From Selaginella moellendorffii (lineage: Eukaryota; Plantae; Lycopodiophyta), in contig NW_003314325.1 of NCBI RefSeq assembly GCF_000143415.4, positions 150,567 to 214,566 on the forward strand: a DNA stretch of 64,000 bases. Reading direction: 5' to 3'. Below the pieces are notes generated by a model. That model did no database searches. It saw only the letters and a program-made list of their open reading frames with translations, and was not told the DNA's origin. Position numbers and translations under genes: made by a program. Of the stretch, positions 36,529 to 43,758 are shown piece after piece (within the stretch, counting starts at the first letter, position 1; each line of letters starts with the position of its first letter).

Positions 36529-38118
36529 ATGGCTTCCCTGGTGAGCCCTAGCTCACTGTCAGTGAGATTGGGCGAGAACTATGGCAGGAGAGGCGGCAGA
36601 GCAGCCGCATTGTGCGTCTCGCAAGCTGGATTCTCGATCAACAGCAAAGATTGCTCGAGCTCGAGTTTTGAAGTGAGTGATTTCCCCCTCTTCTCTTCCG
36701 GATTTGCGTTGATCTAGGTCGGTTCAGGCTGAGCTCAAGAGCGTCCTCTCACAACGTGACATTCTCACGGCGAGAGGAATCAACATGCCTTCCTCGAGGC
36801 CGGATAATCGCTTGAAAATTTTCTCGGGAACAGCGAATCTGCCACTGGCCAAGGTAGAAGAAAAGCTTTCTTTTGTTCTCGTTGTCTCTATTGTTAAAAC
36901 TTTGGCTGTTTGTTCCTCCCTTTGTCTCTTTTGTTGCTATCAGGAAATCGCGTGCTACATGGGCCTAGAACTTGGAAAGATTTGCATCAAGCGCTTTGCT
37001 GACGGTGAAATCTACGTCCAGCTACAGGAAAGCGTGAGAGGCAGTGAAGTGTTCTTGGTCCAGCCGACTTGTCCACCCGCAAATGAGAACTTGATGGAGC
37101 TACTGGTCATGATAGACGCATGCCGGCGTGCATCCGCCAAGACCATCACAGCAGTAATTCCATACTTTGGATACGCCAGAGCTGACAGAAAGGTAGTCAC
37201 TGTGATCCAGCTTTTTCTTTCAATCTACACGTCGTGTGATGTTTTTCAGACTCAAGGACGTGAATCGATTGCAGCAAAGCTTGTTGCAAATCTTTTGACA
37301 GAAGCCGGTGCGAACCGTGTTCTTGCATGCGACTTACACTCGGGGCAGGCGTTGGGTTACTTTGACATTCCCGTGGATCATGTTTATGGTCAGGTAACTT
37401 TGGTTTCTCTCCTCTAAGCGAGCTTATGTTTCGAGCTACAGCCCGTTATACTGGACTACCTCGCAAGCAAGATGATATCAGCTGACGATTTCGTAGTAGT
37501 CTCCCCGGACGTGGGTGGTGTTGCTCGCGCTCGGGCCTTCGCCAAGAAACTCTCGGATGCACCGCTCGCGATCGTGGACAAACGACGTCAAAGTCACAAT
37601 GTTTCTGAGGTGCGATTTGTTTCCTTCTTTGGTTTCTCTCAAAGATTTCTTTTTCTTTTTCTTTTCAGGTGATGAATCTTATCGGTGATGTCAATGGCAA
37701 AATCGCAGTCGTGGTAGATGATATGATTGACACTGCTGGTGAATTGAATCTTTCATCTTTGCTTTGTTCTTCCGGAAGTGATTTGCGTGGTTTTTCCTTT
37801 TCTCAGGGACGATAGCAAATGGAGCTGCGCTTCTTCGTCAAGAAGGAGCCAGAGCTGTCTACGCTTGCTGCACACACGGTGTTTTCAGGTTCAAACATTT
37901 TTCTCTCAGTGCGATTTTGGTATTCACTTTGCTGTTCTTGCAGTCCTCCTGCGATCGAGCGCCTATCAGGTGGTCTCTTCGAAGAAGTGATCATCACAAA
38001 CACGATTCCAGTGAAAGAGAGCTTCAAGGAGCTTACAATTCTCTCGGTGGCGAACCTCCTCGGTGAAACCATCTGGCGGGTGTATGGGGATAGCTCTGTG
38101 AGTAGCATTTTTGGGTAG
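36529..38118 (+). CDS. PRS: Ribose-phosphate pyrophosphokinase (class I PRPP synthase, plastid-targeted)
   Basis: [41 protein letters not shown] and [10 protein letters not shown] motifs. Ser-rich transit peptide. Confidence 0.96.
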
Positions 38119-38373
38119 CTTAGTGGATCCAAAATTCTTTTCATTCGAGTTTCTTCTTTTTCCTCCATGAAAATGCTTTTGATCTTCTCTCCATTTCTAT
38201 TCTCCAGCAAGATTAAATCTTTGTTCTTGATCGCGTGCTAGACTGGATTTGAATCGCACTTGGGACTTGGTATCGACTGATCAATCGAAACAATGCCAAT
38301 GTAATTCTTTGTTATGTAATGTTATAAACTCGTTTTTGAATCTTCTTTCCCTCGATTTAGGGTTTTTCGAGCT

Positions 38374-40346
38374 ATGGCGCTTGCTCTTGCCAATCCCTGC
38401 CAATGGCGCCTCACATTCGTCCCAAATGCGCAAAGTCCTGCACGGCGCCCTTCTTTTCTCGCTGCGGCTGCTGGTCCGCTGCCTGTTCTGGGAATCGAGA
38501 CGAGCTGCGACGACACTGGAGCCGCTGTTGTAAGTGGATTTTCTTGCAGTGAGATTGCATTTTCTCAAGGTTCGTATCAGGTCACTAGCGATGGAAAGAT
38601 TTTGGGAGAGGCACTGAGATCGCAGGTACTTTTTTTCTCTCTTCTTTGTTTTTATTCTGTTTTGTTTTGTTTCTTTGGATTCAAGGCAGAGTTGCTTCGA
38701 CAGTATGGTGGGGTGATGCCTCTAGCAGCACGTCTAAACCACGAGCAAGCAATCGACGAAGTAAGCTATTCTCCTTTCCATGGACGCTTTGAGAGTTGTT
38801 TTATGTTCTTTAGGTGGTGGCACAAGCTCTAGAGAATGCAAAAGTGAAGGAGTCAGATCTGGCAGCAGTAGCTGTGACAATTGGTCCTGGCTTGAGTTTG
38901 TGCTTGGATGGTAACGTTCTTTGTGATCTTTCCTGGGCTTACACTGAGTACATTGTTTTTCTACAGTCGGTGTAAGGAAGGCTCGCTCTATTTCTCGCTG
39001 CTGGAGGTTACCATTTGTGGGAGTACATCACATGGAAGCTCACGCTTTAGTTGCAAGGTTTCATTTCTCTTTTCTCTAGTTTCTTGATCCTGTGCTTCTT
39101 GTGGCTTGTTTGATCCAGACTCACGAATGCTGATATTCAGTTTCCCTTCCTTGTTCTTCTGGTTTCAGGTTTGTGCTTAAGTTTCTTTCTATCGCATACA
39201 AGCACGCAATTGGCAGGTGGTCACAACCTTCTTCTCATTGCAAAAGATGTGGGCGATTATGTTGAACTAGGAACTACTTTAGATGATGCCGTTGGAGAGG
39301 TTTGTTGTTGAGCTCCTGTTCAATTATTTCCCCATGAAAACTGCAGGCTTATGACAAAACAGCGAGGCTCCTTGGTCTTGACATTTGTAAAGGAGGTGGT
39401 CCTGCTCTTGAAGAACTTGCTCTAGAAGGAGATGCAGACGCGTTCAAGTTTACTGTAAGCAACATGCCTGGATCCCTTTATTTGACTATGTAAACTTGTT
39501 CTGACAGGTACCAATGAGGTCCCATAAAGATTGCAACTTTTCGTATGCGGGACTGAAGACTCAAGTGAAGCTCACAATTGAATCTTTAAACATGTAAGGC
39601 TTCACTACCAGTGTCTTGGCTTATGAAAGTTTTTCTTGACGTGGCAGCAATGGTGCAGTACCTTTAGCTTCTGCAAGCTCAAGCGATCGACAATCACGAG
39701 CCAATGTGGCCGCTTCCTTTCAGGTTTGTTACATAATTTTTGATTATCGGCTGAAGTTTGTAATGCAGGTGGTGGCTGTGCGTCACCTTGAAGATAGATG
39801 CCGCCGGGCACTGGAGTGGGCCAGAGAAATGGAACCATGCATGAAGCGCATGGTAAGCCTTCGCTTGGCCAAAGCATTGGATTAATTCGTGATGGCTCAG
39901 GTTGTCGCTGGTGGCGTAGCTTCGAACAAGTACCTTAGAAGTCGACTTGGCGCTGTAGCAAAAGAGCATCAACTGGATTTGTTCTTTCCTCCACCACGTC
40001 TCTGCACAGACAATGGTTTGTTGAAATTGCAATTCATCGCTGCTTCACCGGGCCTTTCGAATTCAGGAGTGATGGTTGCATGGACTGGAGTCGAGTACAT
40101 TCGTCTGGGGCTTTATGATCCACCACCTCCCGTCGATGAACCTGAAGACTATTGGGTACCTCATTTTACCTTTTTGTATGCACTCGAGCCAGTGGCTTTT
40201 TTCAGGTGGATTTAAGGCCTAGATGGAAGCTGGGTGAAATTTGTCGAGAAACATCCTCGGGAAGGCCAGTTAAGAAGAACACGGAAGATTTTCCTTCGCT
40301 AACTTCACAGATCTCACAGAAAAAGTCTGCTTTGAATGCATCATAA
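38374..40346 (+). CDS. GCP1: tRNA N6-adenosine threonylcarbamoyltransferase (TsaD/Qri7/OSGEPL1, organellar)
   Basis: [53 protein letters not shown] and DLRPRW motifs across many short-intron exons. Confidence 0.95.
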
Positions 40347-40366
40347 CAGTAAGAGGGTTTGAACTC

Positions 40367-42511
40367 ATGCTGAGCGTGGCTACCTCCGCGAATCCTTTCA
40401 GCCCACATCTCCAGGCAAGGCAGGTGAGAGCAATGGCGCTGAGTTCGAAAATAAAGGAAGAAGAGAACTTGGAACGAGCCCAAGTTTCTGTGAGCAAGGA
40501 TGTCGCTGCAACGCTGGTTTCCAAGGCGCTCACCTGGGCCTCTCTGAATGGCCTCGTCATTGGTGATAGATCGATCGAGGTAAAGGGCTTTTCGGTCGAA
40601 ACCTTCTTTCTTTTCATACTTTTCTGTTGCGCAGGGCTCTGTAAATCCAGGTGTTGGAATTGTTCATGCACCGGTTGCGCTTCTTCCTTCTCCCTTTCCC
40701 GAGGCTCTCTTCCAGCAAGCTCTCAACCTTGGATCGCATTTTAACACGCTCGTTGATCGTGTGAGCTCCGACAGTGATTTTCTTGAGCAAACACTCGCAA
40801 AGTCTGTATTTGTTTTGGACTCCGTTTCTTTCTGCTCACTTTTTCTCAGGACACGTACTGCTGATCCTTTCACGGACAAACTGCTCGACATTCACTCGAA
40901 AATTCGAGCTGAAGGCATTGTGCAAGTAAGATTCAGACTTTCCTCATTCTGATTCTACTCCTGACTTGATCTATGCATTTTAGAACATACAACTTGGAAT
41001 GCATCGGTCGGACTATATGCGAGATATGGTCACAGGCAAGCTGTTACAGGTTGAGATAAACACCATCTCTTCTTCTTTCGCTGGCCTTGGTTCACTTGTA
41101 AGCCAGCTGCACAGGTATTCACTCCTGTTTCATAGCTGTAGATAACTTATGATTGTTTCCTCAGGGACGTCATTAAAAGAGTCGAGCATCTTGACCCCGG
41201 AAAAGTTCCCGAGAACAACGCAGCTGTTGCATTTGGTGATGTCTTGGGACTTGCTTGGAAGGAATTTGGGAACACGAGGTGAGTGGATGCATGCTTTAAA
41301 AACTACTGACACATTCTACTCCCAGCGCAGCTGTGCTCGTTGTTGTACAACCAAACGAGCGGAATATGTATGATCAGTTCTGGCTGGAAAAATATCTTCA
41401 CGAGCTGTATCCTTTTTCTCTGTTTGTTGATGTTTTTGTTCCTTGACTTTAAGTCAGTCACGGTGCCAATGTGATTCGTCGAACGCTAAGTGAACTTTAT
41501 TCTCAAGCGCATCTATCTTCCAATGGAACGCTTTCTGTGTGAGTGCAATCTTTTTTGGATTTTACCAGTTACAGTTATGTTTTTTGCTTTTCTTTTGCGT
41601 TTGGTTTTCGCAGTGATGGGCATCCTGTCGCGGTCATCTACTACAGATCAGGCTACGCACCCACTGATTATCCTTCCGAGCGGGTATGTGAGCCATTCGA
41701 GGCTATTTCTTTATTTTCTTGTTGTTTCGGTACAAGGAATGGCACGCGAGATTGCTGCTGGAGCGTTCCTCGGCCATAAAATGTCCATCGATCTCATACC
41801 ACTTAGCTGGAACCAAAAAAGTGCAACAAGAGCTTGCCAAGCCGAATGTACTAGAAAGGTACTGCCGTCCTTTGTTTTCAGCTAGTTTGACAGTTCATCC
41901 ATTCTTCAAGGTTTGTTCAAGACAAAAACGCCGCGAAGATCATTCGTGAGTGCTTTGCGGGGCTGTGGGGCCTCGACAGCGAAGAGTGTCACGACATCAT
42001 CAACAAAGCCATCCAGCAGCCCGAGCTATTTGTTCTAAAGCCTCAACGCGAAGGCGGTGGTGAGTTTTCGTTTCCAAGTTTCTCCAGCTTGCAAGCGTCG
42101 AGCTCATCGTTTTCGCCTTTCACAGGAAACAACATCTATGGCAGCGCTGTGAAAGCGAAGCTCGAAGAGCTACTGAGAGACGGAGGAGCCGGGCTTTCGG
42201 CTTATATCCTCATGCAGCGCATCTTCCCACCGACGTACACGTCCTATCTCCTGCGAGGAGGCGAATGGAGCGCCGAGCAAGCAGTCTCGGAGCTGGGAAT
42301 CTTTAGCGCATACTTGAGGTGAGTATCTCGAGCCATTTCACTTCTTTTCATTTCACTTCTTTTCTTTTTCTCTCAATCCCTTTGCAGGAATGGCGAAAGA
42401 GAAATCACCAACAAGGATTGTGGCTACTTGCTGAGAACAAAAGCCTCGAAAGTAGACGAGGGAGGCGTAGCCACTGGCTTCGCTGTTCTTGATAGCGTGT
42501 ATCTCTTGTAG
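40367..42511 (+). CDS. GSH2: Glutathione synthetase (eukaryotic type)
   Basis: [68 protein letters not shown] and [13 protein letters not shown] motifs. Second in-frame ATG at 40433. Confidence 0.97.
41407..41457 (+). other. U12-type (minor spliceosome) GT-AG intron in GSH2
   Basis: Donor GTATCCTTT, branch site TTCCTTGAC (41439-41447) and AG at 41456-41457. Removing it restores the frame ([13 protein letters not shown]). Confidence 0.88.
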
Positions 42512-42745
42512 GAACTCGCTCTCTCTCTTGGAATCATGTTAATTTGGCTTAAATTACACATTGTTTTGAAATTTGATCTGGAAGACTTACTTTTGCCATG
42601 TCCATATAGTATAAGATTAAAAGGCATTTCCAGAACTTCCTGATTAATGTAATTCTAAGGCTATTTTTATTCTCATTTCTAAACACCGTTATATATAAGC
42701 CTAAACCTTAAACCCTAATACAGATACCTGTTTTAGGGTTTTGTG

Positions 42746-43758
42746 ATGCAAGGGGGAATCTGGTATCCTGGTTCTGGGCGGCAAATCCATGTCGACAATC
42801 TTGTGTCTTGCGCCAGGATCGACAAGCAGCAGCCATGTAACTTGGTAAGTGTTGTTGCGCCAAATCATGCAATGAAAATTTCTGCTAGAGCTTTATCACG
42901 TCTCTGGACGTCGAGGGGAAAACTTTAATTTTTGTTGTTCTGGATGGCTGCGGATCACATAACAAGCGTGAGTTTCTATCTCACGTTTTCTCGTCCCTTT
43001 GATCGTTCCCTTTTTCTTTTAACAGGGGCCACGAGTCTTACACATGAAAGGGTGTATACGTTCCAAGATTTGTGCTCGGAAGCATTCGAAAGTCACAGAG
43101 ATCTCTCGCATGCTATTGAGTATCTTATGTCGAGGTAATGGTGTGGTTTCTTTTTCCCTGACTCTCAACCAAAGCCAGGGTAACGACTGCCATAGAAGGA
43201 AGAGTTCAAGACCTCCGCGAGGATGAGAAGGATATGGAGGAAATAAGGGCCCAATGGACATACGACGACAGCGACGACGTACAAGACGAACCATTGGAAA
43301 GCATGGACACGCTCAAGGTGAGAGAGCTAGTTTCTTGGCTAAAACCGCTGGTAACACGCATGCCAGGCTCAAGATTGGACACCATCCTTTCACTCGACAG
43401 TGGTAGTTATCTCGGGGAGAGACATAGCGGTGGGCGGCCCTGGAGCGTTTGCGACTGCCTTGGTCGATTGTAGCACAGGAGATGTGACGGTAAGTAGAGT
43501 TGAAAACTTTGCCTCTCGGTGATCAAATTCCACTGCCAGTGGCTTGCTCCCGGAAGTATGACTGCGCGCATAAAACCGAATGACGTTCTAGTACTTGGAC
43601 CTCGTGATCTGCCACTCGACAAAGTCACACCAACAATTGCCAGGCGTGGGGTGGGTCTAACTTTGAGAATGACAGTGCTTGTGGAGGCTGACCTTGTCTG
43701 TTTTCCAGGAAAGCATAGAGATAGCAGAGCTGTTGTCATCCATGATAGCAGAAAATGA
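42746..43758 (+). CDS. Six-exon ~255-aa protein, highly divergent PP2C/PPM-like
   Basis: Exons 42746-42844, 42889-42967, 43026-43134, 43179-43317, 43367-43489 and 43540-43758 join through GT-AG introns into a stop-free 768-nt CDS. Telo-boxes upstream. The family call rests on motif order only. Confidence 0.75.

What the first reader, a model, noticed from the sequence alone, without database searches (positions are those of the whole stretch)
40206..40450. GCP1 stop and GSH2 start only 20 bp apart: candidate bicistronic or overlapping transcription unit
Seen: the GCP1/TsaD stop is at 40346 and its last exon (DLRPRW..PSLTS) looks like the true family C-terminus. The first GSH2 ATG is at 40367 on the same strand, and the second is at 40433. 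There is no room for a 3' UTR, poly(A) region and promoter, and no TATA or telo-box. Neighbouring same-strand gaps are about 235-255 bp. Known: polycistronic nuclear mRNAs are common in green algae and rare in land plants (for example CDC26-TTM3). Inference: either one mRNA encodes both enzymes, with reinitiation or leaky scanning, or the GSH2 promoter lies inside GCP1 and GCP1 transcripts end inside GSH2. Either way organellar t6A tRNA modification and glutathione synthesis would be coupled.
Basis: partly seen in the sequence, partly recalled or inferred. Interest (0 to 1): 0.8.

Follow-up and report, generated by a model that had tools for sequence, protein, structure and literature searches.

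The report
Two abutting spikemoss genes, overlapping transcripts
In this very compact plant genome, apparently a spikemoss, a tRNA-modification gene (GCP1/TsaD) stops 20 bases before a glutathione synthetase gene (GSH2) starts; assembled RNA runs across the gap, but this looks like two tightly packed genes with overlapping messages, not one message translated into both enzymes.

Summary
GCP1/TsaD (14 exons, 431 aa) stops at 40344-40346. GSH2 (12 exons, 506 aa) has in-frame ATGs at 40367 and 40433. RNA contigs from four studies confirm the flanking introns. RNA covers the 20-nt spacer, and one 1,919-nt contig runs from GCP1's last three exons through all of GSH2. Contigs cannot show single molecules, starts or ends.

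A translated bicistron is unlikely:
- 32 AUGs and a 431-codon ORF with a strong start context precede GSH2.
- Eleven GSH2 introns lie downstream of the GCP1 stop, which would make the RNA a likely decay target.
- GSH2 contigs are 1.7-4.6 times deeper than GCP1 contigs, and the ratio varies between runs.

The family-conserved part of GCP1 ends near 40241. The last 35 codons are a tail absent from E. coli TsaD and probably double as the GSH2 leader or promoter. The only AATAAA in 5.9 kb lies 104 nt past the GCP1 stop, inside GSH2 exon 1.

Best reading: separate, overlapping transcription units, with GSH2 using a weak ATG1 and a strong ATG2, as in Arabidopsis GSH2.

The two genes are unlinked in Arabidopsis. 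Earlier scan notes report at least three similar tight pairs in this genome. Ordinary; low interest.

The parts
38301..38360 (+). 60-nt GT..AG leader intron just upstream of the GCP1 ATG. Its upstream exon lies in the PRS 3'UTR region.
   Evidence: X11 contig 7 joins 38300 to 38361. The X10 GCP1 contig starts exactly at 38361. GT at 38301 and AG at 38359-60.
38374..40346 (+). GCP1 / organellar TsaD (Qri7, Tcs4) coding region: 14 exons, 431 aa, with a 36-aa N-terminal presequence.
   Evidence: Open spliced model. Pfam PF00814 and TIGR03723 on exon 12. 40% identity to E. coli TsaD residues 2-333 of 337.
40206..40346 (+). Last GCP1 exon. RPRW..GE is the family C-terminus. 40242-40343 is a 35-codon tail not shared with E. 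coli TsaD.
   Evidence: Intron 40156-40205 is skipped in 4 runs. Alignment ends at residue 396 of 431. No Pfam, NCBIfam or PDB match to the tail.
40269..40319 (+). Possible alternatively spliced 51-nt GT..AG element, in frame (17 codons), in the GCP1 tail / GSH2 leader.
   Evidence: In X5, X10 and X11 the upstream contig piece ends at 40268 and the next contig starts at 40320. X1 keeps the stretch. The splice-site score is weak: 2.2 against 9-19 for confirmed introns. Inferred; no joint was shown.
40336..40362 (+). 8-codon upstream ORF in any GSH2 leader that starts before 40336. It stops 4 nt before ATG1.
40347..40366 (+). 20-nt spacer between the GCP1 stop and GSH2 ATG1.
   Evidence: Covered by RNA contigs in all four runs.
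40367..42511 (+). GSH2 (eukaryotic glutathione synthetase) coding region: 12 exons, 506 aa from ATG1 (weak context), 484 aa from ATG2 at 40433 (strong context).
   Evidence: All 11 introns are skipped in 4 runs. Open model. PF03917 on three exons. Plant GS structure 5oes (483 aa) aligns its residue 23 to residue 47. Start contexts.
40450..40455 (+). AATAAA, candidate poly(A) signal for GCP1, inside GSH2 exon 1.
   Evidence: The only AATAAA in 37500-43400. Its use was not shown.

Best explanation
GCP1 and GSH2 are two separately expressed genes packed so tightly that their transcription units overlap. The conserved GCP1 enzyme ends near 40241. The reading frame then runs on for 35 more codons, through sequence that also serves as the leader and/or core promoter of GSH2. 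Because only 20 nt separate the stop from ATG1, any normal GCP1 3'UTR must extend into GSH2 exon 1; an AATAAA lies 104 nt past the stop. Likewise, any GSH2 mRNA that carries ATG1 with a normal leader must start inside the GCP1 tail. GSH2 is translated from its own capped mRNAs. ATG1 has a weak context and adds a 22-residue extension that is rich in Ser/Ala/Arg and free of acidic residues. ATG2 has a strong context and gives a 484-aa protein the size of the crystallised plant enzyme. The choice between them is made by leaky scanning and/or alternative start sites, as published for Arabidopsis GSH2. Read-through GCP1-GSH2 RNAs probably exist as by-products but are not the source of GSH2 protein. 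Shown: gene models, splicing, RNA continuity, start contexts, AUG counts. Inferred: positions of the GSH2 start sites and the GCP1 poly(A) site, and targeting by the extension.
For: - Geometry: 20-nt spacer. Contigs at the GSH2 3' end reach 28-71 nt past its stop, so UTRs of that size are usual here.
- RNA contigs, spliced and therefore RNA, cover the spacer in 4 runs from 4 studies. X1 contig 3 runs 39928-42571.
- Contig depths in X1/X5/X10/X11: GCP1 5' 23/26/54/105, GCP1 3' -/32/72/154, GSH2 106/45/162/366. GSH2 exceeds GCP1 by a factor that varies. In X10 the rise lies mainly between about 40320 and 40424.
- A scanning ribosome would meet 32 AUGs and a 431-codon ORF with G at -3 and G at +4 before GSH2.
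- Eleven introns lie downstream of the GCP1 stop. In Arabidopsis such read-through RNAs are NMD targets and their second ORFs are rarely translated (PMC9768141).
- The GCP1 tail lies beyond the end of E. coli TsaD.
- The only AATAAA in 5.9 kb is at 40450.
- ATG1 is weak, ATG2 is strong, and no AUG lies between them. The 5oes alignment places the crystallised N-terminus next to ATG2.
- The neighbouring PRS-GCP1 gap is also transcribed throughout and carries a leader intron, so overlap is a property of the whole cluster.
Against: All RNA evidence comes from assembled contigs, which cannot show single molecules, starts, ends or strand. The tool itself warns that contig depth is a poor measure. 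3' bias in a long read-through RNA could mimic the depth step. No capped 5' end of GSH2 and no poly(A) end of GCP1 was seen. No TATA or telo-box marks a GSH2 promoter. The one contig that bridges both genes is equally compatible with a bicistronic RNA.
Confidence: 0.72

Rival explanations
1. Functional bicistronic mRNA: one capped transcript from the GCP1 promoter carries both ORFs, and GSH2 is translated from it by reinitiation, leaky scanning or internal entry.
For: 20-nt inter-ORF spacer. An unbroken 1,919-nt RNA contig in X1 runs from GCP1 exon 12 to the GSH2 3' end. No recognisable promoter element lies in or near the spacer. Algal bicistrons have spacers this short (PMC11291117).
Against: The GCP1 start context is strong, and 32 AUGs and 431 codons precede GSH2. 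Known bicistrons show a weak ORF1 context and AUG depletion, and reinitiation falls with ORF length. Eleven exon junctions lie after the first stop. GSH2 contigs are 1.7-4.6 times deeper than GCP1 5' contigs. The genes are unlinked in Arabidopsis.
Confidence: 0.06
2. The true distance is larger than it looks. GSH2 mRNAs start between the GCP1 stop and ATG2 (40347-40432), and only ATG2 is used, so stop and start lie 86 nt apart. ATG1 is then an incidental in-frame codon lying in the GCP1 3'UTR.
For: ATG2 has the strong context, and the ATG2 product is 484 aa against 483 aa for the crystallised plant enzyme. In X10 depth rises from 91 (40320-40422) to 162-218 around 40423.
Against: Contigs of the GSH2 depth class start at 40320 in X5 and X11, upstream of ATG1. 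The 22-residue extension has a transit-peptide-like make-up and no stop. This is a sub-variant of the overlap model, because the GCP1 3'UTR would still overlap GSH2.
Confidence: 0.18
3. A dicistronic precursor is cut into two mRNAs, so GSH2 has no promoter of its own.
For: Continuous RNA coverage and no promoter motif.
Against: No trans-splicing or other capping route for a downstream fragment is known in land plants (general knowledge). No leader-like loose ends were seen at 40320-40433 (table 7). The depth ratio varies between runs.
Confidence: 0.03

Closest known systems
Read-through / overlapping tandem transcription units in Arabidopsis (271 polycistronic read-through loci, many with intergenic splicing; Kurihara et al. 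2022, PMC9768141)
   Same: Same-strand neighbours with RNA continuity across the gap. Introns sit in or next to the intergenic stretch (38301-38360; possibly 40269-40319). The second ORF is expected to be untranslated on the read-through RNA, and that RNA is expected to be an NMD target.
   Different: Here the spacer is only 20 nt, so overlap of the two ordinary mRNAs is forced by geometry and is not an occasional termination failure. No long-read, CAGE or NMD-mutant data were available.
Exclusively polycistronic nuclear mRNAs of green algae (Gallaher et al. 2021, PMC7896298; leaky-scanning study PMC11291117), and CDC26-TTM3 of land plants (from memory; not read here)
   Same: Very short inter-ORF distance, same strand, unrelated functions.
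   Different: The algal loci have a weak ORF1 Kozak context and few AUGs before ORF2; CDC26, as I recall, is a very short ORF1. GCP1 has a strong context, 32 AUGs and 431 codons. GSH2 RNA appears more abundant than GCP1 RNA.
Arabidopsis GSH2 with two transcript populations giving plastid and cytosolic enzyme (Wachter et al. 2005, cited in PMC9426629)
   Same: Two in-frame starts, with an N-terminal extension on the longer form. The shorter form matches the mature enzyme.
   Different: The extension here is only 22 residues. The choice may be made by leaky scanning (weak ATG1, strong ATG2, 8-codon uORF). The leader of the long form has to lie inside the upstream gene's coding tail. Localisation is untested.
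Other abutting gene pairs noted by this scan in the same genome (RRP4/OGDH-E1 at 18 nt; LRR-FOLB-RRS1 at 43 and 42 nt; TRAPPC5/PnsB4)
   Same: Same layout and the same kind of RNA evidence. Those follow-ups also judged gene packing and overlap, not an operon.
   Different: Different genes. Those notes are unverified AI notes and I did not recheck them.

Membership tests
Translated bicistronic nuclear mRNA (green-algal / CDC26-TTM3 type) | Short inter-ORF spacer on one strand | tested here: met
   20 nt.
Translated bicistronic nuclear mRNA (green-algal / CDC26-TTM3 type) | Weak initiation context at ORF1 | tested here: not met
   GCP1 ATG has G at -3 and G at +4. Criterion from PMC11291117.
Translated bicistronic nuclear mRNA (green-algal / CDC26-TTM3 type) | Depletion of AUGs upstream of ORF2 | tested here: not met
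   32 AUG triplets in the spliced RNA from 38361 to 40366.
Translated bicistronic nuclear mRNA (green-algal / CDC26-TTM3 type) | ORF2 found only on transcripts that also carry ORF1, with equal RNA levels | tested here: inconclusive
   Only contigs were available. GSH2 contig depth is 1.7-4.6 times that of GCP1 5' contigs, which argues against, but contig depth is unreliable.
Overlapping tandem transcription units / read-through loci | RNA continuity across the intergenic gap on the gene strand | tested here: met
   Contigs cover 40347-40366 in four runs. X1 contig 3 bridges both genes with their introns removed. Strand follows from the GT..AG orientation.
Overlapping tandem transcription units / read-through loci | Independent start site of the downstream gene and poly(A) site of the upstream gene | not testable with these tools
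No raw reads were served. Only indirect signs exist: the depth step and AATAAA at 40450.
TsaD / Qri7 / GCP1 (organellar t6A synthase) | TsaD domain over the full length, with an N-terminal presequence | tested here: met
   PF00814 and TIGR03723 on exon 12. Spliced model is 40% identical to E. coli TsaD residues 2-333 of 337, preceded by 36 extra residues.
Eukaryotic glutathione synthetase (GSH2) | GSH_synth_ATP domain and a complete ORF of family size | tested here: met
   PF03917 on three exons, E from 5e-17 to 6e-8. 506/484-aa open model with 11 RNA-confirmed introns. Weak match of exon 1 to plant GS 5oes.

The most novel reading that the evidence does not exclude
A vascular plant makes a stable GCP1-GSH2 dicistronic mRNA, and GSH2 is translated from it after a 431-codon upstream ORF, by efficient reinitiation or internal entry across a 20-nt spacer. 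This would couple organellar tRNA t6A modification to glutathione synthesis.
Probability: 0.05. Interest if true: 0.7.

Novelty: new member of a known kind. Interest (0 to 1): 0.2.

Why it matters
The main value is for annotation. In this genome, stop-to-start distances of a few tens of bases do not signal operons. Here they appear to signal promoters, leaders and poly(A) signals embedded in neighbouring coding sequence. Assembled RNA contigs will fuse such neighbours and can mislead gene callers. A secondary point is testable: transcription of GCP1 through the GSH2 start region, together with the weak-ATG1 / strong-ATG2 / uORF layout, could set the ratio of organellar to cytosolic glutathione synthetase. 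If the bicistronic reading were true it would be a rare case in land plants, but the evidence is against it.

Tried and rejected
- Word search of the protein database with the 125-aa genomic ORF 40367-40741, hoping to reach the same junction in related genomes. It found no hit.
- PDB, Pfam and NCBIfam searches with the last GCP1 exon. No match. Its family end was shown instead by aligning the spliced model to E. coli TsaD inside a script.
- Rfam scan of 37500-43400 for a tRNA or other small RNA that could make a dicistronic tRNA-mRNA. It found only one chance-level match on the other strand.
- Literature searches for polycistronic, read-through or Iso-Seq work on Selaginella. Nothing relevant.
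- Splice-site scoring of the inferred 40269-40319 element. The score is weak, so I list it only as possible.
- Rejected: a single SNP as the cause of the 51-nt contig gap. At the real SNP bubble at 40423 in X10 the flanking contigs abut at p-1 and p+1.
- Not done: the large representative-protein search. As a result, synteny in other lycophytes, ferns and bryophytes was not tested.
- Joined models were built only inside scripts, to check reading frames and to align to E. coli TsaD.
- I did not verify the species name myself. It comes from earlier notes of the scan.
Full report
**Observation.** The + strand reads GCA TCA TAA at 40338-40346. Twenty bases later comes ATG at 40367, and a second in-frame ATG lies at 40433. 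The last GCP1 exon begins at 40206, after a 50-nt GT..AG intron (40156-40205). The neighbouring same-strand gaps are 255 nt (PRPP synthetase stop at 38118 to GCP1 ATG at 38374) and 234 nt (GSH2 stop at 42511 to the next ATG at 42746).

**Gene models and identity.** I anchored peptides from the three forward frames and searched for frame-keeping GT..AG introns.
- GCP1 comes out as 14 exons and 431 aa.
- Using the joints seen in RNA, GSH2 comes out as 12 exons and 506 aa, or 484 aa from ATG2.
- Pfam finds TsaD (PF00814) on exon 12 of the first gene and eukaryotic GSH synthase (PF03917) on three exons of the second. NCBIfam TIGR03723 agrees for TsaD.
- Inside a script, the spliced GCP1 model aligns to E. 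coli TsaD (fetched) over residues 2-333 of 337 at 40% identity. A 36-residue presequence precedes the alignment, and the C-terminal RPRW motif is included.
- E. coli TsaD ends four residues after the alignment. The plant ORF continues for 35 more residues (40242-40343), which match nothing in Pfam, NCBIfam or the PDB.
- GSH2 exon 1 aligns weakly to the potato glutathione synthetase structure 5oes, residue 47 to chain residue 23. That places the N-terminus of the 483-residue crystallised chain next to ATG2.

**RNA evidence.** Only one run search and one read lay were allowed, and all runs served were Logan contigs. I laid 37500-43400 on four runs from four studies.
- The contigs are RNA. All 11 GSH2 introns, the two GCP1 introns shown and two PRPP synthetase introns are skipped with GT..AG ends. 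The stretch 42622-43015 downstream of GSH2 has zero depth in all runs.
- The spacer is covered in all four runs.
- In X1 one 1,919-nt contig runs from 39928 (GCP1 exon 12) across the last two GCP1 introns, the stop, the spacer and all of GSH2 to 42571.
- In X5 and X11 the GSH2 contig starts at 40320. In X10 it starts at 40424, next to a two-allele site at 40423.
- As the tool states, a contig across two genes does not show a single transcript, and contigs show no starts, ends or levels.
- With that caveat, contig depths are as follows:

| Contig class | X1 | X5 | X10 | X11 |
|---|---|---|---|---|
| GCP1 5' | 23 | 26 | 54 | 105 |
| GCP1 3' | not separate | 32 | 72 | 154 |
| GSH2 | 106 | 45 | 162 | 366 |

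- GSH2 is therefore 1.7-4.6 times GCP1 (5' contigs), and the ratio varies between runs.
- X10 has short contigs that give local resolution. There depth goes from 72 (39928-40268) to 91 (40320-40422), then to 86 + 132 on the two arms at 40423, then to 162. The rise lies around ATG1 to ATG2.
- This is what separate GSH2 start sites would give, but 3' bias could imitate it.

**A possible alternative intron.** In X5, X10 and X11 the upstream contig piece ends at 40268 and the next contig starts at 40320.
- The 51 nt between them begin with GT, end with AG, contain a CTAAC 15 nt before the AG, and are 17 codons in frame.
- This is not how a SNP looks: at the true SNP bubble at 40423 the flanking contigs abut at p-1 and p+1.
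- Alternative splicing of 40269-40319 is therefore the simplest cause. X1 retains the stretch.
- Its splice-site score is poor, and the joint itself was not among the 15 listed; 14 further joints were not shown. I therefore call it possible.
- It would shorten the GCP1 tail by 17 residues, or act as a leader intron for GSH2.
- The upstream gap has a clear parallel. A 60-nt GT..AG intron (38301-38360) ends 13 nt before the GCP1 ATG. In X11 it joins the PRPP synthetase 3'UTR contig to GCP1, and the X10 GCP1 contig starts exactly at 38361.
- So this whole cluster has no untranscribed gap between PRS, GCP1 and GSH2. The 20-nt spacer is the extreme of a local habit.

**Translation logic.** A ribosome scanning a GCP1-GSH2 RNA would first meet the GCP1 ATG in a strong context (G at -3, G at +4), and then 31 further AUGs before GSH2 ATG1.
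- Green-algal bicistrons, the best studied case, show the opposite: weak ORF1 context and depletion of AUGs before ORF2. The same paper notes that reinitiation falls with ORF length (PMC11291117).
- Eleven exon junctions would lie downstream of the first stop.
- In Arabidopsis, 271 read-through loci give RNAs that are NMD targets and whose second ORFs are rarely translated (PMC9768141).
- GSH2 protein is therefore most likely made from its own mRNAs.
- Within GSH2, ATG1 has a weak context (C at -3, C at +4) and ATG2 a strong one (G at -3, G at +4). No AUG lies between them.
- An 8-codon uORF (40336-40362) ends 4 nt before ATG1.
- The 22-residue extension is rich in Ser, Ala and Arg and has no acidic residue. 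A short targeting peptide is plausible but untested.
- Arabidopsis GSH2 is reported to reach plastids and cytosol through multiple transcription initiation (Wachter 2005, as cited in PMC9426629).

**Where the ends probably are (inference).**
- GSH2 contigs reach only 28-71 nt past its stop. A GCP1 3'UTR of that size would already end inside GSH2 exon 1.
- The only AATAAA in the 5.9 kb examined is at 40450, which is 104 nt after the GCP1 stop. Canonical signals do not seem to be required here, because GSH2 has none.
- No TATAAA or TATATA lies between 38324 and 42689, and no telo-box lies between 38400 and 42700. Telo-boxes do sit just before GCP1 (38358) and before the next gene (42710, 42734).

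**Coupling.** The claim that the two pathways are coupled either way is not supported.
- The depth ratio varies between runs.
- In Arabidopsis the orthologues are AT2G45270 (Tcs4/GCP1, PMC4615747) and AT5G27380 (GSH2, PMC10441941), on different chromosomes.
- Earlier notes of this scan describe three other abutting same-strand groups in this genome, all judged to be packing and not operons, and they name the genome as Selaginella moellendorffii. These are unverified AI notes. I use them only as a hint about the base rate and for the species name.

**Limits.**
- No raw reads were available, so no start, end or single-molecule evidence exists.
- Synteny in other plants was not tested. The word search with a genomic ORF found nothing. 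I did not run the large representative search, because the operators reserved it for open identities.

**Verdict.** This is a real and correctly described layout. It is best read as two overlapping but separate transcription units in an extremely crowded gene cluster. It is a new example of a known kind and of low interest.

Noticed in passing
window 38301-38360: 60-nt GT..AG intron ending 13 nt before the GCP1 ATG. In run X11 it joins the PRPP synthetase 3'UTR contig to GCP1, and the X10 GCP1 contig starts exactly at its acceptor. A reverse telo-box (TAGGGTTT, 38358) straddles the acceptor. So PRS and GCP1 also overlap or are read through.
   Followed up: partly
window 40269-40319: Contig ends in three runs bracket a 51-nt in-frame GT..AG element in the GCP1 tail. 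It may be an alternatively spliced intron (exitron, or GSH2 leader intron). Splice-site score is weak, and the joint was not among those listed.
   Followed up: partly
window 39828-39928: In all four runs the GCP1 5' contig ends at 39828 and the next starts at 39928, which is 51 nt of mRNA around the exon 11/12 junction. A direct joint is excluded by the flanking letters. The cause is unexplained; allelic variants or an alternative form are possible.
   Followed up: no
window 42622-43212 and 42746-43758: No RNA contig depth downstream of GSH2 in any run, and only trace depth (0-6) over the next gene, which another note of the scan calls a PP2C-like pseudophosphatase. Two telo-boxes (42710, 42734) sit just before its ATG.
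   Followed up: no
window 40099, 40360, 40373, 40423, 42540-42561: Strain or haplotype differences. Runs X5, X10 and X11 carry C, C and G at the first three sites, and X1 matches the window. At 40423 the window's G is seen only in X10, beside A. 40373 A>G changes Ser3 to Gly in the GSH2 extension. X11 (organism B) has several small deletions in the GSH2 3'UTR.
   Followed up: no
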